Notes: generated from the sequence alone by a model not told the origin. A stretch of DNA of 64,000 nt from Octopus sinensis (GCF_006345805.1 NC_042997.1:153698001-153762000), one strand, 5' to 3'. Shown: positions 8,438 through 32,830, counted from the stretch's first letter. Program-made: numbers and translations.

Positions 8438-8974
8438 GAATGTTACCACTCAGTCTCAAAATATTTTCTTTACACCGCTCTGACCTTGCCATATAACTAT
8501 TAAACTATTGTTTTGAAAGAGTTCGTTCCTATTTACTTGGTGCTATGTATTGCCAATTGGAAATGCTTAGCAACACGTAAATAAAGAACGAACTCTTTCT
8601 AAAAGATAGTTTAATACTTATATGACAAGATTATAGAGGTGTAACAAAATGTGGAATTTCAACAACAATGCCAATAATTGTAATCTTAAAAATTGAAGAC
8701 GCAGTGATTGTGTTTAAAATATAATCGAAAAGAAATAATTGAAATGCATTATAGTCTACTCACAGTACGTGAGATTCGAAAAATGTGTGATATATTCTTT
8801 TTTTATCGAAACTGTTTTTGCCTGAAGGTCGCAGTTGCATGAATCTTCAATCATAAAACACAATCTCAGTTTCATTTTTAATTAAAGCAAAAAAAAAACC
8901 CAGACAAACTGTATCTTCTACAAAATGTATTGAGCACTCTTCTCTCATTCGTGCGACATAAACCAGCGTACCTG

Positions 8975-9005
<31 letters not shown>

Positions 9006-10139
9006 TGTGTGTTGAGTCTATGTATCTTGAGACAATCACTTTTTTTTTCGAATTGTGCTGCTCTATAGTGAAGTCAACGAACAGATTAATGTTTACAGAG
9101 GATAAAAGTTGTTTGTTATTGCTTTTGGTTTGCTAGTTTGACTGATTTATTTTGTTGTTTCGTTATCATGTTGGGATTCTTTTAATTGGATTCACTTGTT
9201 GTTCAGACTCTTGCCATCCGGCAGGCAATTGATCAAAGATGTTCTAGTTGTTCTTATCCAATCGTTCCGCATATCTACGACTACACTGTCCAATGTGTCC
9301 TTCTTTTTAAAAAACGTTTCATGGTGTATTTGAAAGCTATTTAGCTGCTATTTCTTGCAGGATGAGCGTCCACGTCGATACTCTGTCTTCAGTTTCCAGG
9401 TTAGATGACGCTTTTGTTAATGGAATAATGTCTTTGGAATATACCTCGAGTGATTCGGTATTGATACACGATTAGTCACTGCACAAATAACATTGGAATT
9501 AGTATGGTGGCAATAACTCGCCTTTTCTGTCCTCTTCTGACTGAGAATTTTTAATTAATTTCTTTGATAAGCAAATCAAATCTGAGTTGACAAGAAACTT
9601 TATGAGTCAATGATAGATGAAATAGTATTTGTTATACATTGAACATTAGTGACGGATTAGCAGAATCATTAAAACTTCGGCAGGTGAGTGGGGAGAGATC
9701 ATCGTCATCATCCGGTGATACTGCTTGTACGGATTCCTGTGACTCTCCATCGCCACCCAATTCTATTATTTATATTTGAATTAGGAGCTTCACTTATAAT
9801 GCAGTTACTCCCTTGATGGAGCTTTGTGATCTTGACCAATTGATCTAGGATTTTTCCGCTGAGCACCAATGTAAAAAGTGTCGTTGACTCAGTTGACCTC
9901 CGCTGCCTTTTCCCCATCTGCCAATCTACAGTCCCATGACTTTGCCATATTCTTGGTAGGATAGCTGAACGGATGCCATGCCTTGTCAAAGAACAGCCCG
10001 TAACTACGTAAGGCACGGTAGTCACTCCGTGGGGTATTTTCAAAATGCCTTCATACCCAAGGGGAAGAGACGTCCTTACAAACTGAGCTAAAATCCCACT
10101 GAGGACGACTTTGCCTTTCATTCCTATAGTCTTGAATCT

Positions 10140-10835
10140 AGTCTAAGTTGACTGGAAAGTTACCAATGGTGAATAAAATTAAGAGATCCAGGAATAGATT
10201 TGTTGACCGACAACAGTATTATAGAAGGCTTTGCTACAAAATTATTGGCACAATAGTTGACCAACTAAAAGCAAGATGTTCCTCCTTAGAAGAGCTTAAA
10301 TTCATGGAAGCTTTCATGACAATTCGTTTACAGAGTGAACTAAATGTTATATATTCAATGGAAGACTTTTAAAAATAAAGTGTATGTAATTTAATGCATT
10401 ATATTTACATCAATGACCTTATCAAAGCTATGCCACAACTCATCAATTTGATTTTGACATTTCCTTCCACTACTACCTTTGTATTGAAGAGAATTAAAAC
10501 TTACTAAAGAACTACAACCGGGGCAAAGAGACTTTCAGGTTTAGCTCTTATGTAAATTGAAAAACATTTACTCCAACAACAATTAAAGCAGGTGTTTTGA
10601 TGAGAATTTAATAAATATAGAGTGGTTGTATACTGTCAACTTAACGTGACTGTCGCGTTAAGTTGACAGTATACAGCCACTCTATCGCTCCACCACCGCA
10701 CATATCTCTATGAGATATTTAGAAATTTAATATTAATAAATATATTTTTGCCGCTAAAAGTTACGGCTGAAAATAGATTTTTACCGCTATCCGCGGGTGC
10801 CTCGGGAAAAAAATAAGTTGACAATACCCAGATAG
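10140..10835 (+). mobile_element. hAT transposase C-terminal (dimerisation domain) remnant
   Basis: 10487-10565 reads, across stops, LKRIKTY*RTTTGAKRLSGLALM*IEK (hATC consensus LKRIKTYLRSTM.Q.RLS.LALMSIE). Confidence 0.65.
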
Positions 10836-11656
10836 GATGTTGACGAATGTCCTAAAATTTGAGCGACATGCGTGCTAATTTGTGGATGTGCATAAACTAC
10901 AATCACGTACACACACACACACACACGCACACACATCTTGCTGTATATATACACAGATATATATAAATATATATGTACTATTGCGTGACACCTTGGGCAA
11001 GTGTCTTCTGCTATAGACTCGGGCCGACCAAAGACTTGTGAGTATATCTGGTTGACGTAAACCGTAAGAAGCCCGTCTTATATATGTATATATATAATTA
11101 TAGTATATTCTGTTAAGAACGTAGTAGAATACAGTATAAAGCTCACTCGTTCACTTTCACATTTAAACTGTGCTTTCCAGTAGTATATGTATTTCCAGGT
11201 TTGCGTTTGGGAATCTGTCGTGTGTGAATAGATAATTGAAAAAATTGGAGTCAACAAGAAGGGTACGGTTGGACATTTATTTTTTAATCACTACAATTGT
11301 TTGCACGCAACGTAGTTCTCCAGATGTGCAGGTACTTAATTAAGAAACTATTTCCCTGCATTATGAGGTCTAGTTGTGTTTCCTCAGGTGATATGTAAAT
11401 ATTGTCTCTGTAAATTTAAAATCCTCGGCTTCAAGAACATTCTATCTCTCTGTCGTGGCCTTAATTTAGTAGTAGTCACAAAGCCTATCAGGGTATGTTG
11501 TTGGTGAAGGGCCGTTGGCAAACTGCTTTGAATGCGTAAATGTAGTGGGATGGTGATTCTCATACTCTTAAAGTGGTTGCCGCTTTAAAGAGATTGGTAT
11601 TTTATTTCTTTGTACTGTTGATTTGTTCTTCATGGTTGGTTACACATGATTCTCCT

Positions 11657-14600
11657 TGAATATTGAATGAATACATTCACCAATTTCATCCACACTGATT
11701 CCATACATATAAGAGTTGCCAATTGGAATTGCTGAAAAATAAAGAACCTTATTAGCTTATGACTGAATCCAAAATTTAAAACAAAATGTACAGAATTGTA
11801 ATTTAAAAACCAAAAGGGAAAATATAAACAGGTGTTACACACTAGATATTTATTACCAAGTAACAGAGTTAATACCCAGAGCATTACTGTCTCAAGCCCT
11901 AGGGCACATGAGGCTAGTTTCCGGGCCCAAAGTTCTAAGTTAGTGTCATTAATATTCTTGTTTAAGAACTATAAATTTCGGATTAAAGTAAAATTGTTTT
12001 TATTATAACTGATCAGGAAGACAAACACTGGCCATGCTGGGGCACCATTTTGAAGAATTATTAATCCAATGAATTGATCCAGTACTTTGTTTTTTAAAAG
12101 CCTTGTACTTATTCAATCAGCCTCTTTTGTTGCATTGCTATGAGGTGGTATCAAAAAGTTACTGGACTAGTTCTATAGCATGCCAACAGGTGGCAGCACA
12201 TGGTTGCGTGCGCAGTGAGAGCTAGTAGTGTACCGAGTGACATCATTGTGTTTACTTTGCAAGTTGTGAAACTTGTGTTTTTGTAATCACGTGTATACTG
12301 TAGTCTGCGATTTTGTCATGGATAGGAAGTTGGAGCAAAGAGCCAACATGAAATTTGGCATTAAATTGGCAAAGTCTGTTTAAAATACATTGAGCATGCT
12401 TTGGCAAGGTTATGGTAATGAGTTGTATGGGCACTTTAAAAGTGAAAGTATGTCCCTGGGAGACGATGAGCGAGCTGGAAGACCTGCCACAAGCGTTACC
12501 CATTGAAATGTGGAGAATATTTGACAGTTTGTGCATTAGGATTGTTGGAAGGTGATCAATGACATTGCTGGTGTTGGTCTAAATTAAGCATGTGATGAGT
12601 CTCTATCAAGTTTGTTGCCCTCCTGCTGACTACTGAGCAGAAAGAACATTGTGTCGAAGTCTGTCAAGATTGCTGTCAGTATGCTGCTGATGAACAAGCC
12701 TTCATGTCAACGGTCATCACAGGTGATGAGAGTCGGGCCCTGAGATGGAGCAGCAGTAGTCATAATGGAAGAGCCCTCCATTTCCACAACTGAAGAAGGC
12801 ACAACAGAACTGCAGCTCAATCAGGAGCCTGCTCTTCGCTTTTTTTTTTTTTTTTGAGTAGGAGTGGCTGTGTGGTAAGTAGCTTGCTAACGAACCACAT
12901 GGTTCCAGGTTCAGTCCTACTGCATGGCATCTTGGGCAAGTGTCTTCTACTATAACCTTGGGCCGACCAAAGCCTTGTGAGTGGTTTTGGTAGACGGAAA
13001 ACCGAAAGTAGCCCATCGTATATATGTATGTGTGTGTCTGTGTTTGTTCCCCCGCACCAACATCGCTTGACAACTGATGCTGGCGTGTTTACATTCCCGT
13101 AACTTAGTGGTTCGGCAAAAGAGACCGATAGAATAAGTACTAGGCTTACAAAGAATAAATCTTGGGGTCGATTTGCTCGACTAAAAGGCAGTGCTCCAGC
13201 ATGGCCACAGTCAAATGAGTGAAACAAATAAAAGAGTAAAGAGAGTATCCATGGTAGTGTGCATTGAGAATTCGTCTCCCAGGGCCAGACTGTCAATTGA
13301 GACTTCCACTGCAACATTTTGAAGTGTTTGAAGGAGGACATTTGGTGACAATGCACCTTGCTACTAACTTCTTCTCACTCGTTTCTCATAATTTTGCAAT
13401 TCTTTAAATAAATCAACTTTACGCAACTGTGCAACTCTGTTTCCATGTGTGTCTATCTTATATCTTTATCAATCTATCTATCTAAACTAGCAACATGACC
13501 ATACCCAAAATACAACAATATCTATCTATCTTTATCTGTTTATCTTCTCTATCTTCCATTCTGTTAGTATTGTGATATCAAGCTTGCTTCATCATATAGA
13601 ACAAATTTATTAGACAAATGTTTTAAGTATGCACATGTATATATAAGTCTCTATGAATCTGTTTTCTCTTGTAACACAAACACACATGAGCAAACAATAT
13701 GTTCTGTTGATGTATAAGCATGCTTTCATTTGTATGTAAAAGCAGGTAAGCGCTATGTGCGTCTTATAAATTATTCGAATGTATGTTATGTCTATGCCAC
13801 CTGCACACTGAGTCAAATTTAAGGATAATTCTACCCAATACACTTTTACTGCATTTCTTGCTTAAAACAACATGGTATTGCTTCTGCACCAACCCTATTT
13901 GCCAGATTTAGCACCTGAGGACTTCCATTACTTCCCCAAGAGGAAAATACAGCTCAAAGGTCATGGTTTTAACATCATTAATGTGATCAAAAGCGAATCA
14001 CAGAAGGTTCTTGACATGGAAAATGACTTCCAGGCCAGATTCCAAAAATGGCAAGAAGGCTAGGACAGGTGTATTGTGTAAGGTGACTATTTTGAAGGAG
14101 ATTAGGTTAAAACTTAGGTAAATAAGTTATTTTTTATTAAACATAACTAGTCTGGGAATTTTTTGATAATACCTCATAAGTTATGTGGACATAAACACAC
14201 CAACGCTGGTTGTCAAGTGATGGTGTGGGACAAACACAGATGCAAAGACACACATACAGAGGTAGATCCAGGAAGACAAGGTAGTGAAGCATGATCTTTG
14301 AATGTTGGGCCTCATGAGGCGATGACAAGTGACCATGACTTGTGCTTGGGAAGTCTCGTCAAGCCAAGTGAAATTGTAGTTGTGGACATTGGCTGTGTCA
14401 TGCCAATGGCACTTGTGAAATTGTAATCATGACCAATATTAGAAGCATGATCTTCAAATGGTGAGAGTCATAGAGGCGATGACAAGAGATTGAGACTGCA
14501 ATATGCTATGCTGAGAAGACTCATTAAGCAAAATGAAATCATAATTGTGGCCACTGCCTGTTAAGCCAAGTGAAATTGTAGTCATGGCTGTTGAAGGTGT

Positions 14601-14821
14601 CATGTAAATAGCACCTGTACTGGTGGCACATAAAAAGCACCCATTACACTCTTTGAGTGGATGGCATTAGGAAGGGCATTCAGCCATAGAAACCAAACCA
14701 AATCAGGCTAGAACCTGGTGTGGCTTTCCGGTTTACCAGTCCCAGTCAAACTATCTAACCCATGCCAGCATGGAAAGTGGATGTTAAATGATGATGATGA
14801 ATGTATGTATGTGTATATATG

Positions 14822-14852
<31 letters not shown>

Positions 14853-17800
14853 GTATGTAAGTATGTATGTATGTATATATATATGCACAATGGTCTTCTT
14901 TCATTTCCTGTCTACCAAATCCACTCACAAGGCTTAAGTCAGCCCAAGGCTATGGTAGAAGACACTTGCTTGAGGTGCCACACAATGGAACTGAACCATG
15001 TGGTTGGGAAGATCAAGACATCTTTTTCAATGTTGTTTCTCCATGCATAATATAACAGTTATTTCACTTTCCTATGCGGCTCTTTTTTAAAGCAACAGAG
15101 TGTAATTTGAGGGAGATTTGGCTATTGTTTCTAACAGGTTGATTGAACAACCCCACCCCTACTTTATTAGCTTGATAACTTTAAATCAACTAGGGATTTG
15201 GGGTTATTTTTGAGAAGTCTATATATATAGCTTTATATAGGACTATTTAATACTCTGTGTCAGGAAGGTATTCACTGCTACAGGAAAACCTTTTTACAAA
15301 TTATTTTTTTACAGTTCCATCAGGGGAGAATCATTTCAGCATTCTCTTTTCATTTATTTCTCCACACCCAATTGTTAAAAAGTTCTACTGTAATTTTTAT
15401 GCCTGGGTCATTTACAAAGAGATGTAGTAGAAGTGTCAGCATCCTGGTTACAAAAGCGAGACAGAAGTTTTTGATACTTCACAGCAGACAATATGATTAA
15501 GAAAAAAATGAAAATCATACAACAGTTTTTGTCTGTTCTCAAATGATTGCAACAATTGTTTTGCAATGTAACTGTTTCAGTTTGTCATACAGGTAGCCTA
15601 ATTTTTCCCAATATTTTACGAGAACATGTCTGGCAATGAGGAAATATTGTCTTGCTTGGAAACAGGTGAAGGTTGGTCACAGAATGGATATTTAGATGTA
15701 GAAAATCTGTTTCAATAAACTTCATCCCACCCATGTAAGCATGAAGAGGTGGAGATTAAAGACGATGGTATTGTTGGGAAAAACATGACTGTCCAGTTAT
15801 TACTTCAAATCAGTCATAGCCAAGAGAAGCTGAGCTGTAAAGTCATGGGGAATGATGGCTTTAAAGACAAGCAACGAAAGAATTGGGAGATCAATAGAAA
15901 CACCAATATATTTAAAGACATGGAAAAGAGAAACCATGAGCTATAAGATATGGAATCTTTTGTTAATGACGTTCAGAACTGTAAAATAGACTTATGTTAA
16001 AATTCGACAGCCAAAGCTATTAGTTGCAATTGTGTATATTGGAGAAGAGGGAAGAGAAAAATTTTACAATCTACATTTCACTTGTGTTTACCATTGCAGT
16101 TAATGACATTGGCCAGGTTTGAAATCCAGTGCTTTTTTAGGTTGTGAGGAAGAACAAGTTATATGTTACACAACAAGTGATAGAGCAATCTTTTATATGA
16201 GCTTCTGTTGGGTAAATATCTACACTGGTACCACCTGACGACCAACAGAGGGGTACACGACAAGTCTTTGTTATTCTCAAACCTGGTAGCTAGCTTGAAT
16301 GTTTGCAATAAGGTGAAATCTGTGATGGGTGCCTGAGGGTTGAGAGGTAGTATTAACCCTTCAGTGTTCAGATTACTCGGGCAAATGTAATGCTTATTTA
16401 TTCACGTTGATGTTTTTAGAATGATATTGTAGGATAGGTGAGAGAAGCGAGATCTGACCAGTTTGTCCATAAAGCAGGAAGAATATTTGGGCTAGATATG
16501 GCAAGCTTAAATGACCTTAGACAATAAGTAAACATATTGAGTGATACAAATCTTTATACCATATGGCTGGATGTATAATCTTATGAGTTAACCTTTAGAA
16601 TTCTCTGAAGAACCAATACCATTTACACTTTTTAATATACAGGCTTGTGTGAGGAGGTCCATCAGTTCATGGAAACAGCAACAATTACATGGTGATTATA
16701 TAAATATAATAAAATACAAAACAAGAATAAAGAATTTTATAGCTGATAGGTTTTGGTTACTTACATAGTTTATACTTATTTTCTGATATTTTCTGTGGAG
16801 GAGTATTTTCATAAAGATTTTCATAATACCATGGTAGTCGTATAATGGTGTACTTATTAACTCCGCTATTTTTTACATATTCTTCAACTTCAGCTTTGCC
16901 ATCAAAGTGATTGCACACTAGGCCACTGATGCGAACTGCACTTTCTAAACCACTGTAGACAACGTGGTTAACTTTTAGTTCACAACATGTGTTTATAATG
17001 TTCTTCCCCTGCAAAGAGTAACAATGAATTATAGAATAGATTTCTCTCGTTGTATCTTCATATATACATGAAACCATGGAAAAGTTAAATGCAAAATGTT
17101 TCTGAAAAATTTACTCATGAAATATTTAACATACAAAAGACAATCATCATCATTTAATGTCTGCTTTTTCCAGGGTTGCATAGGGCAGATGGAAATTGTT
17201 GAGACAGATTTTCTATAGCTGGATGCCCTTTCTGTTGCCAACCCTCACCTGTTTCCAGGCAAGATAACCAGACATGGTTTTCATGGAACACTGGAAACAA
17301 GCACCATAACTTGTATGATGGTGATGCTAATATATAATAATCATGTGATGTCAATACAAGGGTACATACAAATACATATATATATAAATATATATATATT
17401 GTGTGAATGTTTATGTCTGTGTTTGTGTGTGTTTCTATGTACTTGTCTTGACATGTGAGATATATGACAAGCGTCTTCTTTCTGTCTACCATATCCACTT
17501 ATGAGGCTTTGGCTGACCCGTGGGTATAGTGGAAGACATTACTCCAGGTGCCACACAGGGGCATTGAACTCAAGATGACAAGGTTAGGAAGCAAGCTTCT
17601 TAACCACACAGCTACATCTGTGCTGCAAGGCAAAGTTAAATGCAAAAGGTTTTTGAATATTTTTGCATCAAATATTTGAGACATAAAATTTCTTCAAATA
17701 TAAGCAGCTGTTATCTTTTACCTTTTACTTGTTTCAGTCATTATATTGTGGCCATGCTGGGGCATCTCCTTGAAGAATTTTAGTTCGAAGAATTGACTCC

Positions 17801-19428
17801 AGTGCTTGTTTTTTTTTTTGGAAGCCTGGTACTTATTCTATTGGTCTCTATTGCTAAGCTACTAAGTTATGAAGGCATAAACACACCATGGAGGGAGCAA
17901 ACAAAGACATATGCATGCACACACACACATACAATGCGCTTCTTTCAGTTTCTGTCAACCAAATCCACTCACAAGGATCTGGTTGGCCCAAGGCTCTAGT
18001 AAAATACACTTGCCCAAGGTGCCGTGCAGCAGAACTGGTTGAAAAGTATTCTCCCTATCATTAACCAATTGAATCCAATAATTATAATTTTCAACTCCAA
18101 GAAAAACTTCTCCCAAAGGATGACTTAATACCATACAGTATTTTTACAGTCCAGTTCTAGGTCAGCCCCTTTAGAATGGATCTGTAATCAAAAGGTGTTC
18201 AGTCAGTGACCATAGTAACTTTCATCCATGCGTTATAATATCATATGGTCGAATGTTTCCTTATTACTTATTATTAAGACAGCAGATGTGAAGTGAAGGA
18301 CATCTGGGTGATATTTCTAGCTGGTTTGAGTGACTACATAAAAGCTCCCACATACGCTTGTATTATGCAATGCTTTCAACAACACTGATCCTCAACAAAA
18401 TGAAAGGAGGAGAACTGTATACATAGAGGAAAAGTTGATATTGCTTACTTGTTGCACTTCACAAGATTTATCCATTGTTTCAAAGTAATCTGTGACAGCA
18501 AAACACCCCCATGCTCCTTTTAGACAGTCTCTGATCAGGTCACATTCTTCATAATCTCCTCGACTACTTCACAACCTGTGAACACATGCAAAAAAGGGAA
18601 AATATTTAAGCTTTTGGCATTCTGATAACTCTCAAATGTAAAGCTAATTTATTCACATTGTTTTGAATTAGTCATGCATCATCTCATAGCTTCAAGATTT
18701 CAGCAGAATTGGAGAAGAAATTCCAGGTATGGAAACAAAATCTGGAATCAAACGGCCTTAAAGTTAACCTAGTGAAGACCAAAGTTGTTGTAACTAAGAA
18801 AGAAGATAAAACTCTTTTTCTCTCAGGTAAATGGCTCTCCTGAATATGTTGGAAAGGAGTTGGAAGAAATTCCACTCGCTGAACCCAGTATAAACTATGG
18901 ACATGAGGTGCAGTGGAATCATAGGTAGATTAACAGATAAGTCGTCTTAATGCCCGGGAGGCTCTCTTCAGGTTGTAAATCGTTTTTCTTACCTAGGTGA
19001 CCAAATTAGCAATGGTGGAGGATGCTCTGAAGGTATTGTTTCTAGAATAAGAATTGGGCGGAGGAAGTTCAGAGAACTATTACTTCTGTTAGCAACAAAA
19101 GGACTTTCTCTCAGAGCGAAAGGTAGACTATATGATGCTTGTATGCAAATGGCTATACTCCATGGTAGTGAGACATGGGCTCTGAATGCAGAAGACATGC
19201 GTAAACTAGAGAGAGAGAGATGAAGGTAGTATGTTCCATTGGATGTACAACATCAGTGCATATGTACAACAAAGTGCAAATGTATTGAGAGAAAAGTTGG
19301 GCATAAGAGGAATCAAATGTAGCATGCAAGAGAAAAGACTATGTTGGTTTGGGTATGTGATGTGTATGAATGAGGACAGCTGCATAAAGAAGTGCTGATC
19401 ACTGAAAGTGGATGGTATCTGCAGAAGA
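11657..19428 (-). pseudogene. Inverted partial duplicate of NMRAL1 (part of intron 1, exon 2, exon 3, first 75 nt of exon 4)
   Basis: Reverse complement of 24033-29075. Exon 2' 18449-18575 is 127 nt versus 128 (1-nt deletion, gtcgaaggag to gtcgaggag, frameshift). Exon 3' 16765-17008 is open (VCD to VCN). Exon 4' 11657-11731 is truncated. No exon 1 or 5. Confidence 0.9.
12141..14176 (+). mobile_element. Decayed mariner element with nested SINE
   Basis: TIRs tgaggtggtatcaaaaagttactggactagtt / aactagtctgggaattttttgataatacctca, TA on both flanks. Fragments EQRANMKF, TGDES, HQPYLPDLAPEDF. Confidence 0.8.
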
Positions 19429-19880
19429 TATCTGCGTCTGTATGATGGATACCCATCAGCACCTGTGTGAGTTTCTTGTAGGAATCTCCTTGGAAATCTT
19501 TTTGAACATATGCTGTCCTTCAAGCATGGTGAGTTTATGTTGAATCCACGCCCATATGGACCATGTACCATGTTTGCTTTAACTATTTTGTATAGTTCTT
19601 TGTCTAAAGCTGGATCAGGAAGCTCTACAGAGATTATGCTGTCGATGTCATTGGAATTGATCTTCGCTGAGAGCCAAAGCAGGATATGAGCATGTGGAAG
19701 GCCCATTTTTTCCCACTCGATTGTGTACATGTCACATTGTATGGGCCCAAAGACTTTCCCTTTTTGTATGAGCTCCATGAGAGAGATTAACTTCAGATGG
19801 AAAACTCGGGCTTTGAGATTCCGGTTCGAATGTAAGGCAGGTTTGAAAGTGTTCCCAACAGTTATTAGTTGTAGTGATAG
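19429..19880 (-). mobile_element. Helitron Rep (HUH endonuclease) fragment
   Basis: ORF 19206-20060 contains ARVFHLKL...KGKVFG...YTIEWEKMGLPHAHILLWL...ELPDP...MVHGP..CSKRFPR...DGYPSYRRR. It ends at the duplication breakpoint. Confidence 0.9.
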
Positions 19881-20899
19881 AGTGTTTATGCCGAATATGT
19901 ACGTATGCATGTATATATATGTATGTATGCCTGTATATATGTACAAAATCCACTGAGAAGGCTTTTGTTGGTCTGAGGCTACAGCAGAAGACACATGCCA
20001 AGTCACCACACAATAGGACTGAACCCAGAACCATGTGTTTGGAACGTAGTTTGTTACCACACAGCCACACCTGCCCCAATGTATGTGTGTGTGTGTGTAT
20101 GGGTAGATACATTATGTATGTATATATGTGTATATATATGTGTACATATTACATGTACATCTATATATATACATCTACACATAAAATACAAAATACAAAG
20201 TTATATCTTGATATCGCAAGTGATAACAATACTCAAAATATATAACACACTGGAATTGTAGGCCCATCTCTCGCAATTTCGATCAATTGGATCTTGTCCT
20301 CCCTCTTGTATAGAAGTGTACGGCTGCAGCGAAATTCATTCTATCAAAGGCATTTTAACAAAAATGCTTCCGTAAAGACGGTGAAAATATTGTCAATTTC
20401 CCCAAACAGGGACAATTCAATTTTTAAACAATAACCAAAGCCTCTTCTCCGAAAAGGGGAGGGTTACGGTTTACAATTATTTAGCAAATGCAACACAACA
20501 ACGTTTCCCTGACGAGGAACCAACAAACGTGATTACAATAGTCAAACAGTAATAATAATAACAAACCTTTTTAATTTATCCCCATTTATGTGAAACCACT
20601 TATTCAAGTTCAAGTCATTGATGCAATTTTATATGAATTGCTAATACACACACACACACACACACATAATAAGGGTGAAAAATTGAATATTAATTTGATT
20701 AATATGAATTGAAAACCAGTGGTGTAGCATATAAGACCATAGCAGATCTTCTGCTAGCAAAATGGATGACCATTGTTAATGGTTCATCCCTGTTATATAA
20801 TACTTTCACTTTAATAGTAAAAGTGTCTGCATTACAAAAGAGAGATGTTTTTGTTTCACTTTTAACACGTAATACTGAAATAGTGGAGAAGATATGATA

Positions 20900-21074
20900 T
20901 TGCTGTGGGGTCGCCCTAGGGAAAAAGTTAAGTTTTTTTTGCTGATGACACTCCCCGGACCTTAGGTAAGACATGTGTAAAATTTGAATGAAATTGGTTG
21001 TGTAGTTCTCAAGTTTTAGGGAAACACACAGACAGACAGACAGACACACATTCTCAGTTTTATATATAGAGAGA
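20900..21074 (-). mobile_element. Helitron-type 5' terminus
   Basis: Minus strand a|TCTCTCTATATATAAAACTGAGAATGTGTGTCTGTCTGTC: the A|TC start plus short microsatellite typical of animal Helitron 5' ends. Confidence 0.6.
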
Positions 21075-22136: not shown

Positions 22137-25100
22137 ATGGCGGAGGAAGCTGAGAAAGAACCTGAGACAGCAGAACCCGAGACAGAATCAGAAAATGAGA
22201 CAAAAATTATAACAGTTTTTGGTGCCACTGGTATGCAAGGTGGATCTGTTGTTAGAGCCCTGTGCCAAGAAAGTTCAAAGTTTAAAGTAAGAGCAGTAAC
22301 AAGACATCCAGACGGAGAAAGAGCCCAAGAATTAAAAGAGTTAGGTACGTTATTGTATTTCATTTCGATAAATTTTCGACCAAATTTAATGTGTATATTT
22401 GAAACAAGCTGTTCAGTTTTTTTTTTTAATTTCGTATCTTTAACTAAATTCGAATAATGGGAAAATGTAGTCAAAATACTTCTTACATATATCAGAAAAG
22501 ACTGAACTTTAAATTTTTATAAAGTTTTAAAGGGTAATAAATAACTGAACGAAAAACATTGATGTTGCAAATGAAATTTTAAATCTATTTACACTAAAAC
22601 CGTTCTTTGTTTCCTGCAATATCTTTATTCGGGATATTCTTAATATTAAAGAACACAGAATAACGTCATTCATCACTAGACAGAAAAACAAAAGCTTTTA
22701 ATTATTAATTTGAGATATGTGAATGTTTACCACTCTATAATTATTGTAGAATATTGTGCAATTTATATACAGTTTCAAAGTTACATATTTTAATTTTTTT
22801 TTCTCGTCCAAGTTTTACATTTTCCTCGCTTTTTTTTATTTACCACGATAAATAAATATTTTGATACAGGGGATACAAATCTGGTGAAAATGGTTTACAA
22901 GTGCGAGTTAGCTTGTCAGTAGAGATATATCGACTTCTAACGGAAGGCTCAATGCCACAAATGTTATACGTAAAAAAGCAATCAATTAAATATGACCCAA
23001 AAGTTGACTAGTATTTGTTTTATCGACCTCAGAAGTATAAAGAACGGAGTCGACCTTGGCGGGAATTGAATTTGAGCGTAAAAGGAAAGTAAACAATCGT
23101 TTCTGTGGCACATTTCCCTAATCAGGATTTGTTTTAGGAAGATAAATATTGAATGTTTTAGATATTTCCCTAAATCTCAGTTCCTATGTTCATAATAAGT
23201 TGATAATTAAATATTATTTCCATTTATTTTATCTATTAATTAATACCATATAACTCAGGACAACCTTCCCCGTGATCGGCGATTGAGCTGGGTTATCCTA
23301 CCCTATTCGCTTAGTAAGGAGAGGTGTGACAATGAAACCTGTCTAACGGGCAAAATCCCTCGAACAGAGACACCCAACGGCCCACCATGTTTGGGGTGGG
23401 GGACACTACATGATGATGCAGATAAATTATTTAAGAGAGGGGACATTGGAGGATGTGATCTTGTGTCAGATGATGAAAGGTTATAGTGAGGCAGAGAGAC
23501 AGAAACAGGTGTCTTGCTGTAGAGGTGGTACAAAGTTACCCCGCCGGAGAGAGAGAGAGAGATCAGGGATGAAGGCAGAAACAGGTGCGCTGCTGCTAAG
23601 GAAATACATGGTTACCTAACCAGAGGAACGTTCAGGAGAAGGAGAGAGAGGGAGACAGCAGGATAGAGATGGTGGCAAAGTGCTGGGAATACACAATGAT
23701 ACAGTAAGACAGAGCATGGGTAGAACAGGTCGGAAGCTTGCAGATAGCAGTGATACAATTGCACAGAGCCAAGAGGACAGGATAGGGGAGTGGGAAGTAA
23801 GCTGAGCGCATGAAGTGGAAATGTGAGGAAAAGAAGAGATGTAGTTTGTAGTGTGTGAGAAATTTTCTTAAGTGTGTATGGGACACACAGGACTTCTAGA
23901 ACTCAGTTTCACTGACGTGGATGGGTTTTCTCAAGAACTTCAGGTGTCTTCGTTTATTGTCATTTCCTCCGTGAGGCCCGATATCCAGAGATCAGTCCTT
24001 ACTACTTCATCGCATGTCTTCCTGAGCCTCCCTCTTCTGCAAATACCATCCACTTTCAGTGATCAGCACTTCTTTATGCAGCTGTCCTCATTCATACACC
24101 TCACATGTCCAAACCAACATAGTTTTCTCTCTTGCATGCTACATTTGATTCCTCTTATGCCCAACTTTTTTCTCAATACATTTGCACTTTGTTGTACATA
24201 CGCACTGATGTTGTACATCCAATGGAGCATACTACCTTCATCTCTCTCTCTCTCTAGTCTACGCATGTCTTCTGCATTCAGAGCCCATGTCTCACTACTA
24301 TGGAGTATAGCCATTTGCATACAAGCATCATATAGTCTACCTTTCACTCTGAGAGAAAGTCCTTTTGTTGCTAACAGAAGTAACAGATCTCTGAACTTCC
24401 TCCACCACCCAATTCTTATTCTAGAAACAATACCTTCAGAGCATCCTCCACCATTGCTAATTTGGTCACCTAGGTAAGAGAAACGATTTACAACTTGCAG
24501 AGAGCCTCCTGGGCATTAAGACGACTTATCTGTTAAACTACCTATGATTCCACTGCACCTCATGTCCATAGTTTATACTGGGTTCAGTGAGTGGAATTTC
24601 TTCCAACTCCTTTCCAACATATTCAGCAGAGCCATTTACCTGACAGAAAAAGAGTTTTATCTTCTTTCTTAGTTACAACAACTTTGGTCTTCACTAGGTT
24701 AACTTTAAGGCCCTTTGATTCCAGATTTTGTTTCCATACCTGGAATTTCTTCTCCAATTCTGCTGAAATCTTGAAGCTATGAGATGATGCATGACTAATT
24801 GAAAACAATGTGAATAAATTAGCCTTACATTTGAGAGTTATCAGAATGCCAAAAGCTTAAATATTTTCCCTTTTTTGCATGTGTTCACAGGTTGTGAAGT
24901 AGTCGAAGGAGATTATGAAGAATGTGACCTGATCAGAGACTGTCTAAAAGGAGCATGGGGATGTTTTGCTGTCACAGATTACTTTGAAACAATGGATAAA
25001 TCTTGTGAAGTGCAACAAGTAAGCAATATCAACTTTTCCTCTATGTATACAGTTCTCCTCCTTTCATTTTGCTGAGGATCAGTGTTGTTGAAAGCATTGC

Positions 25101-28100
25101 ATAATACAAGCGTATGTGGGAGCTTTTATGTAGTCACTCAAGCCAGCTAGAAATATCACCCAGATGTCCTTCACTTCACATCTGCTGTCTTAATAATAAG
25201 TAATAAGGAAACATTCGACCATATGTTATTATAACGCATGGATGAAAGTTACTATGGTCACTGACTGAACACCTTTTGATTACAGATCCATTCTAAAGGG
25301 GCTGACCTAGAACTGGACTGTAAAAATACTGTATGGTATTAAGTCATCCTTTGGGAGAAGTTTTTCTTGGAGTTGAAAATTATAATTAAGTTCTGCTGCA
25401 CGGCACCTTGGGCAAGTGTATTCTACTAGAGCCTTGGGCCAACCAGATCCTTGTGAGTGGATTTGGTTGACAGAAACTGAAAGAAGCGCATTGTATGTGT
25501 GTGTGTGCATGCATACATATGTCTTTGTTTGCTCCCTCCATGGTATGTTTATGCCTTCATAACTTAGTAGCTTAGCAATAGAGACCAATAGAATAAGTAC
25601 CAGGCTTCTCAAAAAAATAACAAAAAAACAAGCACTGGAGTCAATTCTTCGAACTAAAATTCTTCAAGGAGATGCCCCAGCATGGCCACAGTATAATGAC
25701 TGAAACAAGTAAAAGGTAAAATATATCAGCTGCTTATATTTGAAGAAATTTTATGTCTCAAATATTTGATGCAAAAATATTCAAAAACCTTTTGCATTTA
25801 ACTTTGCCTTGCAGCAAGATGTGGCTGTGTGGTTAAGAAGCTTGCTTCCTAACCATGTCATCTTGAGTTCAATGCCCCTGTGTGGCACCTGGAGTAATGT
25901 CTCCCACTATACCCACGGGTCAGCCAAAGCCTCATAAGTGGGTATGGTAGACAGAAAGAAGACGCTTGTCATATATCTCACATGTCAAGACAAGTACATA
26001 GAAACACACTCACAAACACAGACATAAACATTCACACAATATATATATATATATATTTATGTATTTGTATGTACCCTTGTATTGACATCACATGATTATT
26101 ATATATTAGCATCACCATCATACAAGTTATGGTGCTTGTTTCCAGTGTTCCATGAAAACCATGTCTGGTTATCTTGCCTGGAAACAGGTGAGGGTTGGCA
26201 ACAGAAAGGGCATCCAGCCATAGAAAATCTGTCTCAACAATTTCCATCTGCCCTATGCAACCCTGGAAAAAGTGGACATTAAATGATGATGATTGTCTTT
26301 TGTATGTTAAATATTTCACGAGTAAATTTTTCAGAAACATTTTGCATTTAACTTTTCCATGGTTTCATGTATATATGAAGATACAATGAAAGAAATCTAT
26401 TCTATAATTTATTGTTACTCTTTGCAGGGGAAGAACATTATAAACACATGTTGTGAACTGAAAGTTAACCACGTTGTCTACAGTGGTTTAGAAAGTGCAG
26501 TTCGCATCAGTGGCCTAGTGTGTGATCACTTTGATGGCAAAGCTGAAGTTGAAGAATATGTAAAAAATAGCGGAGTTAATAAGTACACCATTATCCGACT
26601 ACCATGGTATTATGAAAATCTTTATGAAAATACTCCTCCACAGAAAATATCAGAAAATAAGTATAAACTACGTAAGTAACCAAAACCTATCAGCTATAAA
26701 ATTCTTTATTCTTGTTTTGTATTTTATTATATTTATATAATCACCATGTAATTGTTGCTGTTTCCATGAACTGATGGACCTCCTCACACAAGCCTGTATA
26801 TTAAAAAGTGTAAATGGTATTGGTTCTTCAGAGAATTCTAAAGGTTAACTCATAAGATTATACATCCAGCCAAATGGTATAAAGATTTGTATCACTCAAT
26901 ATTTTGACTTATTGTCTAAGGTCATTTAAGCCTGCCATATCTAGACCAAATATTCTTCCTGCTTTATGCGCAAACTGCTCAGATCTGGCTTTTCTCACCT
27001 ATCCTACAATATCATTCTAAAAACATCAACGTGAATAAATAAGCATTACATTTGACCGAGTAATCTGAACACTGAAGGGTTAATACTACCTCTCAACCCT
27101 CAGGCACCCATCACAGATTTCACCTTATTGCAAACATTCAAGCTAGGTACCAGGTTTGAGAATAACAAAGAATGTTGTGTACCCCTCTGTTGGTCGTCAG
27201 GTGGTACCAGTGTAGATATTTACCCAGCAGAAGCTCCTGTAAAAGATTGCTCTATCACTTGTTGTGTAACATGTAACTCTTTTCCATGTCTTTAAATATA
27301 TTGGTGTTTCTATTGATCTCCCAATTCTTTCGTTGCTTTTCTTTAAAGCCATCATTCCCCATGACTTTACAGCCCAGCTTCTCTTGGCTCTGGTTGGTTT
27401 GAAGTAATAACTAGACAGTCATGTTTTACCCAACAATACTATCATCTTTAATCTCCATGTGTTCATGCTTACATGGGTGGGATGAAGTTTATTGAAACAG
27501 ATTTTCTACATCTGAATATCCATCCCGTCACCAACCTTCACCTGTTTCCAAGCAAGACAATATTTCCTCATTGCCTGACATGTTCTCGTAAAATATTGGG
27601 AAAAATGACACTACCTGTATGACAAACTGAAACAGTTACATTGCAAAACAATTGTTGAAACCATTTGAGAACAGACAAAAACTGTTGTATGATTTTCATT
27701 TTTTTCTTAATCATATTGTCTGCTGTTAAGTATCAAAAACTTCTGTCTCGCTTTTGTAACCAGGATGCTGACACTTCTACTACATCTCTTTGTAAATGAC
27801 CCAGGCATAAAAATTACAGTAGAACTTTTTAACAATTGGGTGTGGAGAAATAAATGAAAAGTGAATGCTGAAATGATTATGCAAATGATTATACCCCTGA
27901 TGGAACTGTAAAAAAATAATTTGTAAAAAAGTTTTCCTGTAGCAGTGAATACCTTCCTGACACAGAATGTATTAAATAGTCCTATATAAAGCTACATACA
28001 TAGACTTCTCAAAAATAACCCTAAACCTCTAGTTGATTTAAAGTTATCAAGCCAGTAAAGTAGGGGTGGAGATGTCCAATCAACCTGTTAGAAACAACCA

Positions 28101-28329
28101 CCAACTCTCCCTCAAATTAAACCCTGCCGTTTTAAAAAAAGCTGCATAGGAAAGTGAAATAACTGTTATATTATGCATAGAGAAACAGCATTGAAAGATG
28201 TCTTGATCTTCCCAACCACATGGTTCAGTCCCCCTGTGTGGCACCTCAGGCAAGTGTCTTCTGCCATAGCCTTGGGCTGACTTAAGCCTTGTGAGTGGAT
28301 TTGGTAGACAGGAACTGAAAGAAAACCAT

Positions 28330-28364
<35 letters not shown>

Positions 28365-31300: not shown

Positions 31301-32830
31301 TTGAACTCAAATGACATGTTTGTTGGTTTGATTGGAATTCTTGGAATAAAAATGTCTTCCCGGAAGCACATCCAATAATGATAATAGCTTCTATCACATT
31401 AGATAACCTTCTCATTGCATAATTTAGGAGGATTTCTTAACAGTATTAGGACTCCTACCTTCAGAAAAAGTTTATGCAATGGAGTTCCAACCATGTCTGT
31501 AATGTCATAATTTGTCTCTCTTGCCATGTCACTTGAAATTAATTCACAAATTTGACAGTTTCTCTTTGGCAATCGAAAGTTAGACTCTTGTAAATTTTTG
31601 CTTCTCATGGCCAAAACTTGATCCTCAATTTCAATCAGTGCTTGGTTAGAAATTGTTTCAGAGAACTGAATATCAATATCTAGGTTTGTCTATTGAACTG
31701 CATACTTTCTTTTAGTGTTTAGATTGGCCACAACCGACCGAAAATTACTCCCCTTTATTTGAACTGGCCAATTCCAGCTATATCCGATTTCTTTACATAG
31801 TCGCTAAGAAAAATATAATCATATTGAATTCCCGTAGCATTGAGATAATGCAAGATAAAACCCTTTCCACCTTTATTCAAGTGAAATTTTTGAGACTTCT
31901 TAGTTTTTGCAACGTTTGAAGAGTGTATATCTTAGTTTTTAAAGAAATGGTGCCAGCAAGTAGCAATTCAGGCTTCAAAGATTTTCTTCTTGATAATAAA
32001 GACCGATTTCTCTTTGGATTCAGGTCGCAATGCTCATTTTCTAGAAAACCTTGTTGATAGCACGTTTCTATAAGTTTCACACACGACCATTTACCCTCCT
32101 TGATTCTTTGAATGATTTAGGACCATATACTTCATGCAAAAGGAACTGCAAGTAGTAGCATTCTACTTGGCGGTGGGGGGGAGGGCTTTTTTTCTTCAGG
32201 TGTAATAATTGGGTAAAAGACTTGTCAGCACTTGTTCTAATAAATTACGTTTATTCTTAAAGTGCCCCATTACTGTTACGTCGACTTTCCACATTATTTA
32301 CTACCATTGCTTTAGTAATAAGCTAAGAGACATCAGTTGTATTGTGCAAGTATGATAATGACGTATATGGCTGAAGACAGCTGCATAAGTGCTGATCTCC
32401 AATTGTGAATGCTGAACTTGTTTTAAACGGGGCCACATTCATTGACTTACGTTTCAATAGAATTGTCAAGCAAAAATAAGCACACAGTTAACAAGCATAA
32501 TGACTAGGCTATTCCCCTTGGACCTGTGCTTTCTCTTTTTAGTTGAGTGGCTACTGCTCTCTTTGTGGGACCATCATAGCTAAATTTAAAACCTTTGTCT
32601 ACTTCCAGATTTCTTGTGACGAATATGAAGATCAGAATCAGAGTATTCCAGGTGTAAAGGAGCTGTCAAATATGTTCCGGTTTTATAAACAGGCAAGAAG
32701 TGACCGTAACATAGAAGAATCACGAGAACTGAATCCTAAACTTGCAAATTTGGATGATTGGGTGAAACAGAACAAAGAAAAGTTGCTGAAAGCCCTAGAA
32801 GAAAACGATAAACTAACTGCAGAGAGCTAG
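22137..32830 (+). CDS. NMRAL1: NmrA-like family domain-containing protein 1 (NADPH-sensing atypical SDR), 5 exons, 331 aa
   Basis: Exons 22137-22344, 24891-25018, 26428-26671, 29001-29194, 32609-32830. All have GT-AG sites, phases are consistent (1,0,1,0) and the total is 996 nt. Motifs: ITVFGATGMQGGSVV (Rossmann), VRAVTRHP, HFDGKAEVEEY, IRLPWYYEN, ELSNMFRFY..R..E....LNPK. AATAAA at 32890. Confidence 0.93.
23280..24790 (-). mobile_element. RTE-clade LINE 3' fragment in NMRAL1 intron 1 (part duplicated at 18680-19428)
   Basis: QVWKQNLESKGLKVNLVKTK, GRLYDACM...LHSSETWAL, ERKLCWFGHV. Confidence 0.82.
30011..31003 (-). mobile_element. Mariner (Tc1/mariner) element, internally deleted, both TIRs present
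   Basis: TIRs ttgggttggcaactaagtt / aactcagttgccaacccaa; TA at the left end. Transposase fragments GAWLPHAL and HLPYSPDLAPMDF. Confidence 0.88.
31019..32250 (-). mobile_element. Decayed Helitron middle/PIF1-helicase fragment with 3' CTAG end, NMRAL1 intron 4
   Basis: Fragments CYYLQFLLHEVYGPKSF, PLHKLFLKVG..ILLRNPPKLCN, CFSHGQLYVG. Minus strand ends gccaggtgCTAG|t at 31019. Confidence 0.8.

What the first reader, a model, noticed from the sequence alone, without database searches (positions are those of the whole stretch)
11657..21074. Inverted NMRAL1 exon 2-4 copy fused to a Helitron Rep fragment: candidate gene-fragment capture next to the source gene
On the minus strand the order is: Helitron-type 5' end (21074), Rep HUH fragment (19880-19429), then with no spacer the NMRAL1 sense sequence from 24033 through exons 2 and 3 to nt 75 of exon 4. 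The Rep frame stays open across the junction (..DGYPSYRRR|YLLQIP..). Helitron gene capture is established in plants and some animals; that it caused this duplication is inference. I found no 3' hairpin/CTAG at the distal end, and the DNA between Rep and the 5' end is interrupted.
Basis: partly seen in the sequence, partly recalled or inferred. Interest (0 to 1): 0.75.

Follow-up and report, generated by a model that had tools for sequence, protein, structure and literature searches.

The report
Inverted NMRAL1 copy abutting Helitron relic
Just upstream of the octopus NMRAL1 gene lies a real, backwards, partial and broken 7.8-kb copy of that gene, joined to a 0.4-kb scrap of a Helitron transposon; two octopus species share it, and it looks like an ordinary local DNA-repair duplication rather than proven Helitron gene capture.

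Summary
The window is Octopus sinensis chromosome CM016859.1. NMRAL1 has 5 coding exons on the + strand (22137-32830). An inverted copy (L arm, 11657-19428) covers intron 1 from 24033 through exons 2 and 3 to nt 75 of exon 4. It is 96.4% identical to its source (R arm) over 5006 aligned bases. Its inner end abuts a 137-codon Helitron Rep fragment (19841-19431, minus strand) with only 2 extra bases between them.

An independent O. vulgaris assembly has the same junction, so it is not a mis-assembly. O. bimaculoides and Argonauta show one exon set only. RefSeq already annotates the copy as a 120-aa NMRAL1-like protein. It is nevertheless decaying: it lacks exons 1 and 5, exon 2' is frameshifted, and O. 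vulgaris has deleted exon 2'.

Helitron capture is only partly supported. 21074 is a true insertion boundary and starts TC after A. No 3' terminus exists, the Rep piece is cut at both ends, the geometry excludes read-through capture, and the junction shows no microhomology.

Best reading: a break inside a dead Helitron relic was repaired by copying about 7.5 kb from the neighbouring gene in inverted orientation. Modest interest.

The parts
11657..19428 (-). L arm: the inverted partial copy of NMRAL1 (intron 1 distal part, exon 2', intron 2, exon 3', intron 3, first 75 nt of exon 4'). It reads sense on the minus strand.
   Evidence: Self-BLAST and MAFFT give 96.4% identity over 5006 aligned bases to 24033-29075. 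The arm is present in O. vulgaris.
24033..29075 (+). R arm: the source segment inside the functional NMRAL1 gene.
   Evidence: Both ends are contiguous with the rest of the gene. It is collinear with the single-copy O. bimaculoides gene across the 24033 point (L004 14967-18288).
18449..18575 (-). Exon 2' of the copy. It carries a 1-nt deletion (frameshift) and keeps AG/GT splice sites.
   Evidence: This exon lies inside a ~1-kb deletion (18120-19118) in the O. vulgaris copy.
16765..17008 (-). Exon 3' of the copy. It has 5 substitutions (including D->N, and P->S at the exon boundary) and is otherwise intact.
11657..11731 (-). First 75 nt of exon 4' of the copy, identical to the source. The copy ends here, at the distal junction 11656/11657.
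11640..18475 (-). CDS range of the RefSeq gene model on the copy (XP_036361584.1, 120 aa). It starts at a Met late in exon 2' and ends ...HSIFKENHV* five codons into the left flank.
11848..14336 (.). 2489 bp present only in the L arm. Part of it (11848-12820) is ancestral intron 3 that the source gene lost later. It also holds a SINE (12855-13247) and an ORF I recognise from memory as a mariner transposase C-terminal fragment (13866-14060; Pfam gave no hit).
   Evidence: O. bimaculoides L004 18994-20107 aligns to 12820-11657. The O. vulgaris R arm also lacks this segment. ORF; Pfam.
19429..19430 (-). Two bases (TA on the minus strand) between the Helitron and NMRAL1 homology. This is a junction insertion with no microhomology.
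   Evidence: Three-way comparison of the window, Helitron locus L001 and the R arm. The bases are identical in O. vulgaris.
19431..19841 (-). Helitron Rep (HUH nuclease domain) fragment of 137 codons, corresponding to aa ~530-658 of a 1490-aa RepHel. It is cut at both ends and has no internal stop.
   Evidence: Pfam PF14214 at E=6.7e-12. tblastn/phmmer. It is 87% nt identical to O. bimaculoides Helitron locus L001 11068-11443.
19938..20084 (-). Truncated SINE copy flanked by microsatellites. It interrupts the DNA between the Rep fragment and the 21074 terminus.
20796..21074 (-). Repeat 'X', the terminal segment of the inserted element. On the minus strand it starts TCTCTCTATATATAAAACTGAG directly after host A. 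It is a candidate Helitron 5' end.
   Evidence: It is 79% identical to L001 14062-14330, which also starts TC after A but lies 137 bp downstream of the RepHel stop. O. bimaculoides homology breaks at 21074/21075.
8971..11656 (.). Left flank of the copy. It is 2.7 kb of unidentified DNA, including a SINE piece at 10915-11113 and (TG)n at 8972-9010, and is also absent from O. bimaculoides. It has no Helitron similarity.
22137..32830 (+). Functional NMRAL1 gene with 5 coding exons and a 331-aa product. Its start codon is 1063 bp from the 21074 boundary.

Best explanation
This is a lineage-specific inverted segmental duplication that left an unprocessed, partial NMRAL1 pseudogene. Its inner breakpoint happens to lie in a dead Helitron relic.

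Proposed sequence of events:
1. (Inferred) After the split from the O. bimaculoides lineage, a Helitron-family element, or a non-autonomous derivative of one, sat about 1 kb upstream of NMRAL1 on the opposite strand, with one terminus at 21074.
2. (Inferred) A double-strand break or collapsed replication fork occurred inside its Rep region. It was repaired by copying about 7.5 kb from the neighbouring gene body (24033 to 29075 of the then-longer intron 3 version), using the opposite strand as template. This is a fold-back or inverted template switch.
3. (Shown for the inner junction) The newly copied DNA was end-joined. The inner junction has a 2-nt insertion and no microhomology. (Inferred) Whatever lay to the left of the break, including the rest of the Helitron, was lost or displaced.
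4. (Shown) All of this predates the O. sinensis/O. vulgaris split.
5. (Shown) Afterwards the source gene lost 2.49 kb of intron 3. The two arms partly homogenised by gene conversion. The copy decayed, with a frameshift in exon 2' in O. sinensis and deletion of exon 2' in O. vulgaris.

In this reading the Helitron is a passive landmark, not the engine of the event.
For: Structure and junctions.

Reality of the structure: an independent O. vulgaris assembly carries the same arms and a base-identical junction.

Lineage specificity: O. bimaculoides and Argonauta show one exon set only. L and R are equally distant from O. bimaculoides (0.051 vs 0.050) and closer to each other (0.023) on shared sites.

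Order of events: the 2489-bp L-only segment is ancestral intron 3. It is missing from the R arm of both species. The duplication therefore precedes that deletion, which precedes speciation.

Gene conversion: there are 19 'same-species' informative sites against about 15 unclustered 'orthologous' sites and 4 discordant sites.

Pseudogene state: the copy has no exon 1 (which carries the Rossmann GxxGxxG motif) and no exon 5. Exon 2' is frameshifted and is deleted in O. vulgaris.

Helitron is a relic: only 137 Rep codons remain. No RepHel N-terminus lies upstream and nothing Helitron-like lies left of 11657. No 3' hairpin/CTRR was found.

Geometry: the copy is inverted relative to its source, and the source lies 5' of the element. 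This fits strand-switch repair and not read-through (direct reading of coordinates; models as summarised in PMC6544945).
Against: The break falling inside one of the few Helitron pieces in the region, rather than anywhere else, is unexplained. It would be natural if Helitron activity caused the break.

The ancestral empty state could not be reconstructed. O. bimaculoides carries 6.8 kb of unrelated DNA plus a 2756-N assembly gap where O. sinensis has 8971-21074.

The origin of the 2.7-kb left flank is unknown.

RefSeq models a 120-aa ORF on the copy, and exon 3' is intact in both species. Residual expression or function is therefore not excluded.
Confidence: 0.6

Rival explanations
1. Helitron 'filler-DNA' gene capture caught at the donor site. 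A break inside a then-active or mobilisable Helitron was patched with NMRAL1 DNA, making a composite Helitron. That composite could have been, or was, mobilised.
For: Rep sequence and NMRAL1 sequence are joined directly and lie on the same strand. 21074 is a genuine insertion terminus starting TC after A, and it matches a repeat linked to the same Helitron family in O. bimaculoides. Helitrons were active in this lineage, with a burst at JC 0.09 and 178 recently active copies in O. vulgaris (PMC13282606). The filler-DNA model allows internal capture in any orientation (PMC6544945).
Against: There is no 3' hairpin/CTRR between 8900 and 21100. The left boundary shows no similarity to the post-ORF region of the related Helitron. 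The junction has a 2-nt insertion, not the 2-13 bp microhomology reported for filler captures. The Rep piece is also cut at its 5' side, and 1.2 kb of non-coding patchwork separates it from the terminus. Seven and a half kb is very long for filler DNA. No second copy is known, though I could not search for one.
Confidence: 0.2
2. Multi-template replication patchwork (MMBIR or chromoanasynthesis-like). The whole 8971-21074 block was stitched in one event from several templates. The Rep scrap would then be a copied filler piece rather than part of a resident Helitron.
For: The block is a mosaic of unrelated pieces. From left to right it holds the unknown 2.7 kb, the NMRAL1 copy, the 415-bp Rep scrap cut at both ends, unknown DNA, and repeat X. 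All of it is absent from O. bimaculoides.
Against: Repeat X ends exactly at the host boundary, with a TC-after-A start that is reproduced at an independent locus. That is what an ordinary transposon insertion gives and would be a coincidence for a template switch. X and Rep both resemble one Helitron locus, which suggests they arrived together. The SINE and microsatellites explain part of the mosaic as later insertions.
Confidence: 0.12
3. The Helitron is a later, independent insertion next to a pre-existing duplication.
For: Helitrons were active in the lineage. The orientation and position alone do not forbid it.
Against: A later insertion would place a Helitron terminus at the border of the duplication. 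Instead the Rep ORF is cut in mid-domain, between the HUH motif and the catalytic-tyrosine region seen in relatives, exactly where NMRAL1 homology begins. Only 2 bases lie between them.
Confidence: 0.03
4. End-bypass (read-through) transduction. The Helitron missed its 3' stop signal and carried off flanking NMRAL1 DNA.
For: It is the classical capture model (PMC6544945), and the source gene is adjacent.
Against: The gene lies on the 5' side of the element, and the copy is inverted relative to the source. Read-through would copy collinear 3' flank. The Helitron's own 3' part, which read-through requires upstream of the captured DNA, is missing.
Confidence: 0.02
5. Assembly artefact: a collapsed or misjoined haplotype, or a fold-back chimeric read.
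For: Inverted repeats with short spacers are a known long-read artefact class (general knowledge).
Against: The arms differ by 3.6% and by indels of 2489, 228 and 42 bp. The same structure and junction occur in the independent O. vulgaris assembly GCA_951406725.2.
Confidence: 0.01

Closest known systems
Inverted (fold-back / DUP-INV type) segmental duplications produced by break repair or replication template switching (FoSTeS/MMBIR), leaving unprocessed partial pseudogenes
   Same: The copy lies a few kb from its source in inverted orientation and retains introns. It starts and ends at arbitrary points (mid-intron and mid-exon). One junction carries a small insertion. The copy then decayed, and the arms underwent gene conversion.
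   Different: The mechanism class is inferred from the architecture only. The second junction partner and the pre-event sequence are unknown. The inner breakpoint lies in transposon-derived DNA.
[quoted passage not shown]
   Same: Helitron Rep-derived sequence is contiguous with a host gene fragment containing several exons and introns, on the same strand, behind a TC-after-A terminus.
   Different: There is no 3' terminus and no evidence of more than one copy. The source gene is adjacent and the copy is inverted. The captured piece is ~7.5 kb. The junction has no microhomology. The Rep sequence is a 415-bp scrap.
O. bimaculoides Helitron at CM046602.1 (locus L001), the closest retrievable relative of the Rep fragment
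   Same: It is 87% nt and 78% aa identical over the Rep fragment. It carries repeat X at 79% identity.
   Different: L001 holds a near-complete RepHel ORF (9734-13925), with X after the ORF. The window holds only aa ~530-658, with X before it.
Human NMRAL1/HSCARG (PDB 2wm3, 2exx), an NADPH-sensing NmrA-like protein
   Same: The parent gene product aligns end to end at E=2.6e-63.
   Different: The copy lacks exon 1, which carries the N-terminal GxxGxxG motif (GATGMQG in the 331-aa product), and the C-terminal exon 5. It cannot encode an equivalent protein.

Membership tests
Helitron carrying a captured gene fragment | RepHel-derived sequence is present | tested here: met
   Pfam Helitron_like_N at E=6.7e-12. 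There are 5710 phmmer hits. 137 codons align to aa ~530-658 of full RepHel proteins. It is a fragment only; no helicase or N-terminus belongs to it.
Helitron carrying a captured gene fragment | 5' terminus begins TC, immediately after a host A, at a true insertion boundary | tested here: inconclusive
   The boundary at 21074/21075 is real relative to O. bimaculoides and reads A|TCTCTC. A second copy in L001 reads A|TCTATA. In L001, however, this repeat lies 137 bp after the RepHel stop codon. It may be the head of a tandem element or a 3' region. The 5' end of L001's own element is hidden in an assembly gap.
Helitron carrying a captured gene fragment | 3' terminus: short GC-rich hairpin followed by CTRR, then host T | tested here: not met
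   No perfect hairpin (stem of 6 or more) plus CTRR-T lies on the minus strand between 8900 and 21100. Only 1 such site exists on that strand in the whole window. The left boundary is a (CA)n run with no similarity to the related element's post-ORF region.
Helitron carrying a captured gene fragment | Empty A|T site in a relative, with both host flanks adjacent | tested here: inconclusive
   The gene-side flank is conserved in O. bimaculoides up to ...ATAA|T. The DNA on the other side (L004 9590-10473) has no counterpart in the window or in O. vulgaris, and a 2756-N gap follows.
Helitron carrying a captured gene fragment | The chimera exists in more than one genomic copy (it was mobilised) | not testable with these tools
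   No DNA search of octopus genomes is available. Exact-protein look-ups of the junction-spanning ORF found nothing. The 120-aa product maps to one contig only.
Helitron carrying a captured gene fragment | Geometry fits end-bypass: captured DNA is collinear 3' flank downstream of the element's own 3' end | tested here: not met
   The source lies on the 5' side. The copy is inverted. The element's 3' part is absent.
Helitron carrying a captured gene fragment | Filler-DNA signature: short microhomology between acceptor and source at the junction | tested here: not met
   At the inner junction, Helitron homology ends ...CGCAGA, then TA, then source homology begins TCTTCTGCA. There is no shared bases at the switch point. 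The outer junction is not assessable because the acceptor sequence is unknown.
Inverted segmental duplication / unprocessed partial pseudogene | Copy retains introns and intron-exon structure of a nearby parent at high identity | tested here: met
   96.4% identity over 5006 bases. AG/GT splice sites are retained at exons 2' and 3'.
Inverted segmental duplication / unprocessed partial pseudogene | Incomplete and disabled coding capacity that is not conserved between species | tested here: met
   The copy lacks e1, most of e4, and e5. Exon 2' has a 1-nt deletion. O. vulgaris deleted 18120-19118, including exon 2' and the modelled start codon.
Inverted segmental duplication / unprocessed partial pseudogene | Real in the genome (independent assembly) and lineage-specific | tested here: met
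   It is present with an identical junction in O. vulgaris GCA_951406725.2. O. bimaculoides (apart from its gap) and Argonauta hians show one exon set only.
NmrA-like family (NMRAL1/HSCARG), parent gene | Full-length NmrA domain with an N-terminal NAD(P)-binding motif | tested here: met
   Pfam NmrA on exon 1. The 331-aa product aligns to residues 4-294 of 2wm3_A at E=2.6e-63. It is identical to XP_029638764.1.

The most novel reading that the evidence does not exclude
Two more novel readings are not excluded. (a) This is the first documented Helitron-associated gene-fragment acquisition in a cephalopod, caught at the donor locus by an internal filler or strand-switch route that copies a neighbouring gene in inverted orientation. 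(b) The 5-7 kb inverted arms flanking the NMRAL1 promoter and exon 1 are functional. Read-through transcription across the L arm, the spacer and the R arm would fold into a very long double-stranded RNA overlapping NMRAL1 exons 2-4. That would be a substrate for the unusually active cephalopod ADAR editing or small-RNA machinery, and could tune the parent gene.
Probability: 0.12. Interest if true: 0.6.

Novelty: new member of a known kind. Interest (0 to 1): 0.3.

Why it matters
The locus has three uses.

It is a cleanly datable example of how a partial gene copy arises and decays in octopus genomes. The order is: duplication, then a 2.49-kb deletion in the parent, then speciation, then independent decay and gene conversion in each species.

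It corrects an annotation. The RefSeq 'nmrA-like family domain-containing protein 1' of 120 aa (XP_036361584.1) is a truncated, frameshifted inverted duplicate, not a second NMRAL1 gene.

It is a caution for Helitron-capture claims. Adjacency of Rep sequence and host exons on one strand is not enough without termini and additional copies.

If further copies of the chimera were found, it would become the first Helitron capture described in cephalopods.

Tried and rejected
(1) One split Helitron. A second Helitron remnant (H1, 32169-31127, minus strand, NMRAL1 intron 4) covers RepHel aa 866-1478. That is complementary to the Rep fragment and on the same strand, so I considered that a rearrangement had split one element. 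I rejected this. H1 is only ~50% aa identical to Helitron locus L001 and has no nt similarity to it. The Rep fragment is 78% aa and 87% nt identical to L001. They belong to different families.

(2) Rest of Rep to the left of the copy. I looked for the continuation of Rep left of 11657, which a simple insertion of the copy into a Helitron would predict. None was found with eight RepHel queries.

(3) Helitron 3' end at the outer boundary 8971. Local alignment to the post-ORF region of L001 was no better than shuffles: 76 of 300 shuffles reached the observed score.

(4) Hairpin plus CTRR scan. No site was found in the relevant interval.

(5) Pfam on ORFs of the left flank, repeat X, the LINE-like ORF and the mariner-like ORF. 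There were no significant hits.

(6) Exact look-ups of the junction-spanning ORF (GTG-start and ATG-start versions) in public assemblies, to find read-level support or other copies. Nothing is on record.

(7) Reconstructing the pre-duplication site from O. bimaculoides. This was blocked by non-homologous DNA and a 2756-N gap. Argonauta is too distant for non-coding alignment.

(8) The open reading frame across the junction as evidence of a fusion protein. I rejected this because the frame is already open for 201 codons in the source.

(9) A first exon-only protein search returned only short ORF fragments. The full-length query was needed to reach the annotated octopus orthologues.


Full report
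SOURCE AND GENE

The window is Octopus sinensis. Locus L006 from GCA_006345805.1 chromosome CM016859.1 equals window 28475->1640 at 100% identity.

On the + strand lies a five-exon gene: e1 22137-22344, e2 24891-25018, e3 26428-26671, e4 29001-29194 and e5 32609-32830. Its 331-aa product aligns end to end with human NMRAL1/HSCARG (2wm3_A, E=2.6e-63). It is identical to O. sinensis XP_029638764.1.

Self-comparison shows an inverted repeat. 11657-19428 (L arm) matches 24033-29075 (R arm) with 4824 of 5006 aligned bases identical. The L arm is longer by 2489 bp (11848-14336), 228 bp (15931-16158) and 42 bp.

R is contiguous with the gene at both ends. O. bimaculoides is collinear with R straight across the 24033 point. 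R is therefore the source, and both novel junctions belong to L.

Homology ends at 29075, which is nt 75 of exon 4. In L, exon 2' (18575-18449) has a 1-nt deletion, exon 3' (17008-16765) has five substitutions, and the exon 4' piece is identical to the source. Splice dinucleotides are kept.

THE HELITRON PIECE

The ORF 19206-20060(-) hits Pfam Helitron_like_N at E=6.7e-12. Word-indexed and exhaustive protein searches find thousands of Helitron Rep relatives. tblastn with eight RepHel proteins aligns only 19841-19431, which corresponds to aa ~530-658 of the 1490-aa P0049.

Relatives continue after ...YPxYRRR with KPxDGG...DNRWVVPYNP. The window switches to NMRAL1 intron 1 at that point. Nothing upstream (19881-21074) encodes the RepHel N-terminus, and nothing left of 11657 is Helitron-like. 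The Rep sequence is therefore a 415-bp scrap cut at both ends.

The junction reads Helitron ...ACAGACGCAGA, then TA, then TCTTCTGCAG... of the source. That is a 2-nt insertion with no microhomology.

The frame does stay open for 74 codons beyond the junction. The same frame is open for 201 codons in the source (ORF 23872-24474). It runs antisense to an ORF I recognise from memory as a LINE ORF2 C-terminal region, although Pfam gave no hit. Only the phase match is a chance event.

IS 21074 A HELITRON 5' END?

Comparison with the O. bimaculoides orthologous locus (L004) shows that homology upstream of NMRAL1 stops exactly at 21074/21075. On the minus strand the insert begins A|TCTCTCTATATATAAAACTGAG.

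The first ~280 bp (repeat X, 21072-20796) recur at 79% identity at another O. bimaculoides locus, L001. There too X begins TC after A. L001 also carries the closest relative of the Rep fragment (87% nt, 78% aa), inside a near-complete RepHel ORF at 9734-13925. X and Rep therefore belong to, or travel with, one Helitron family.

In L001, however, X lies 137 bp after the RepHel stop codon, following a (TG)n run, and not upstream of the ORF. It could be the head of a tandem second element or a 3' region. L001's own 5' end is hidden in an assembly gap. The claim 'Helitron 5' end' is thus plausible but not established.

No 3' end exists. A scan for a perfect hairpin plus CTRR-T found nothing on the minus strand between 8900 and 21100. 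The outer boundary of the lineage-specific block (8970/8971) is a (CA)n run with no similarity to the related element's 3' region.

COMPARATIVE DATING

O. vulgaris (L005, an independent assembly) has the L arm, the Rep fragment, repeat X and a base-identical junction. This excludes mis-assembly and places the event before the sinensis/vulgaris split.

O. bimaculoides and Argonauta hians have a single set of NMRAL1 exons and no inverted copy within 10 kb upstream. The caveat is a 2756-N gap in O. bimaculoides. On sites shared by all five sequences, L and R are equally far from O. bimaculoides (0.051 and 0.050) and closer to each other (0.023). L therefore arose from R after that split.

The 2489-bp L-only segment is partly ancestral intron 3: O. 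bimaculoides L004 18994-19919 aligns to 12820-11848. It is missing from R in both O. sinensis and O. vulgaris. The parent gene therefore lost it after the duplication but before speciation. The 228-bp difference is a deletion private to the O. sinensis R arm, because the O. vulgaris R arm is collinear with L through that segment.

Informative sites split as follows:
- 37 sites group orthologues, but about 20 of them cluster in a poorly aligned 60-bp patch.
- 19 sites group the two arms of one species.
- 4 sites are discordant.

This indicates gene conversion between the arms, so the 3.6% arm divergence underestimates the age. One paper equates JC 0.09 with 25 My (PMC13282606). On that calibration, 3.6% pairwise divergence is very roughly 5 My as a minimum. 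The upper bound is the O. bimaculoides split, put at 13-33 My in the same paper.

STATE OF THE COPY

RefSeq models a 120-aa protein on the L arm (XP_036361584.1). It starts at a Met late in exon 2' and ends five codons into the left flank.

The copy lacks exon 1, with its GxxGxxG motif, and exon 5. It is frameshifted in exon 2'. In O. vulgaris a ~1-kb deletion (18120-19118) removes exon 2' and that start codon. This is the profile of a decaying unprocessed pseudogene.

MECHANISM

Read-through (end-bypass) capture is excluded by geometry. The gene lies on the 5' side of the element, the copy is inverted, and the element's own 3' part is missing. The models are as summarised in PMC6544945.

A later Helitron insertion is unlikely, because the Rep ORF is cut in mid-domain exactly at the junction.

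What fits is repair of a break or collapsed fork inside the relic by copying ~7.5 kb from the neighbouring gene on the opposite strand, followed by end joining. If one calls that 'filler-DNA capture', it is capture without any sign of a functional or mobilised composite element. The junction also lacks the microhomology that model predicts.

My estimates are:
- passive-relic inverted duplication, about 0.6;
- active Helitron filler capture, about 0.2;
- one-step multi-template patchwork, about 0.12;
- the remaining explanations, a few percent together.

A FALSE LEAD WORTH RECORDING

A second Helitron remnant (H1) lies in NMRAL1 intron 4 on the same strand, at 32169-31127. It covers RepHel aa 866-893, 979-1030 and 1346-1478, which are exactly the parts the Rep fragment lacks. 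That suggested one element split by a rearrangement.

H1 is only ~50% aa identical to L001 with no nt similarity. The Rep fragment is 87% nt identical to L001. They belong to different families and are independent insertions.

VERDICT

The feature is a new member of a known kind: a lineage-specific inverted segmental duplication, or unprocessed pseudogene, abutting a transposon relic. Interest is modest.

Noticed in passing
window 31127-32169 (minus strand), NMRAL1 intron 4: A second, internally deleted Helitron remnant (H1) matches RepHel aa 866-893, 979-1030 and 1346-1478 of P0049. It belongs to a different family from the Rep fragment (~50% aa to L001). It is present in O. vulgaris. The surrounding 29615-32219 has no aligned counterpart in O. 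bimaculoides.
   Followed up: yes
window 11640-18475 (minus strand): RefSeq XP_036361584.1 ('nmrA-like family domain-containing protein 1', 120 aa) is modelled on the inverted partial duplicate. It probably annotates a pseudogene as a protein-coding gene.
   Followed up: yes
window 33153-33225 (minus strand): Rfam SNORD83 (C/D-box snoRNA) matches just above its gathering score (36.9 vs 35 bits). The site lies between the NMRAL1 3' end and the neighbouring minus-strand gene.
   Followed up: no
window ~33000-42700 (minus strand); L004 22637-32493, L005 20643-30500, L002 17543-27430: The downstream neighbour, in convergent orientation, is a NOP56/NOP58-family gene (Pfam NOP5NT + Nop in the orthologous loci). 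Synteny of NMRAL1 with this gene is conserved from Argonauta to Octopus.
   Followed up: partly
L002 and L003 (Argonauta hians BAAFZT010000002.1 and BAAFZT010000006.1): The Argonauta assembly carries the NMRAL1 + NOP locus twice, on two different sequences, with the same 331-aa NMRAL1 product and gene coordinates that differ by one base. This is either an uncollapsed haplotype or a recent large duplication.
   Followed up: no
window 21107-21506 (+): A full-length octopus SINE copy inserted between the Helitron-type boundary and the NMRAL1 promoter region. It is absent from O. bimaculoides (L004 10515/10548) and present in O. vulgaris. Related copies lie at 12855-13247, 29622-30004 and 63527-63859.
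   Followed up: partly
window 24063-24347 (minus) and its copy at ~19114-19398 (+): A 94-aa ORF (…LYDACMQMAILHSSETWAL…WFGHVRCM…) resembles, from memory, the C-terminal part of a non-LTR retrotransposon ORF2. Pfam gives no hit. The duplication breakpoint 24033 lies 30 bp beyond its stop codon.
   Followed up: partly
window 30561-30797 (minus) and 13866-14060 (+): There are two mariner-type transposase fragments. One matches the non-Helitron tail of P0033 by tblastn. The other is recognised by eye (…PDLAPEDFHYFPKRK…), with no Pfam hit.
   Followed up: no
window 65-484, 2068-2462, 3290-3501, 33860-33958, 53435-53613; L001 1117-1294 and 21939-22121: A ~170-180-bp interspersed repeat family occurs in direct and inverted pairs at the left end of the window. 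Copies are 81-90% identical, and copies also occur in O. bimaculoides.
   Followed up: no
L004 9590-10473 (O. bimaculoides): The alternative first exon of O. bimaculoides NMRAL1 isoform X2 (MIFSFPATSIDGPVRG, L004 10001-10047) lies in DNA that has no counterpart in O. sinensis or O. vulgaris. It sits next to a tandem repeat and a 2756-N gap. The isoform may be species-specific or spurious.
   Followed up: partly
window 28033-28532 vs 14690-15190: This stretch of the arms is only 87% identical, against 96-99% elsewhere. It coincides with SINE and microsatellite sequence and with a cluster of about 20 'orthologous-pattern' sites. It may reflect misalignment or an unconverted older tract.
   Followed up: no
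L005 2922-3756 (O. vulgaris): The O. vulgaris L arm carries an ~830-bp insertion relative to O. sinensis at window ~14870-14885, in addition to its ~1-kb deletion of 18120-19118.
   Followed up: no
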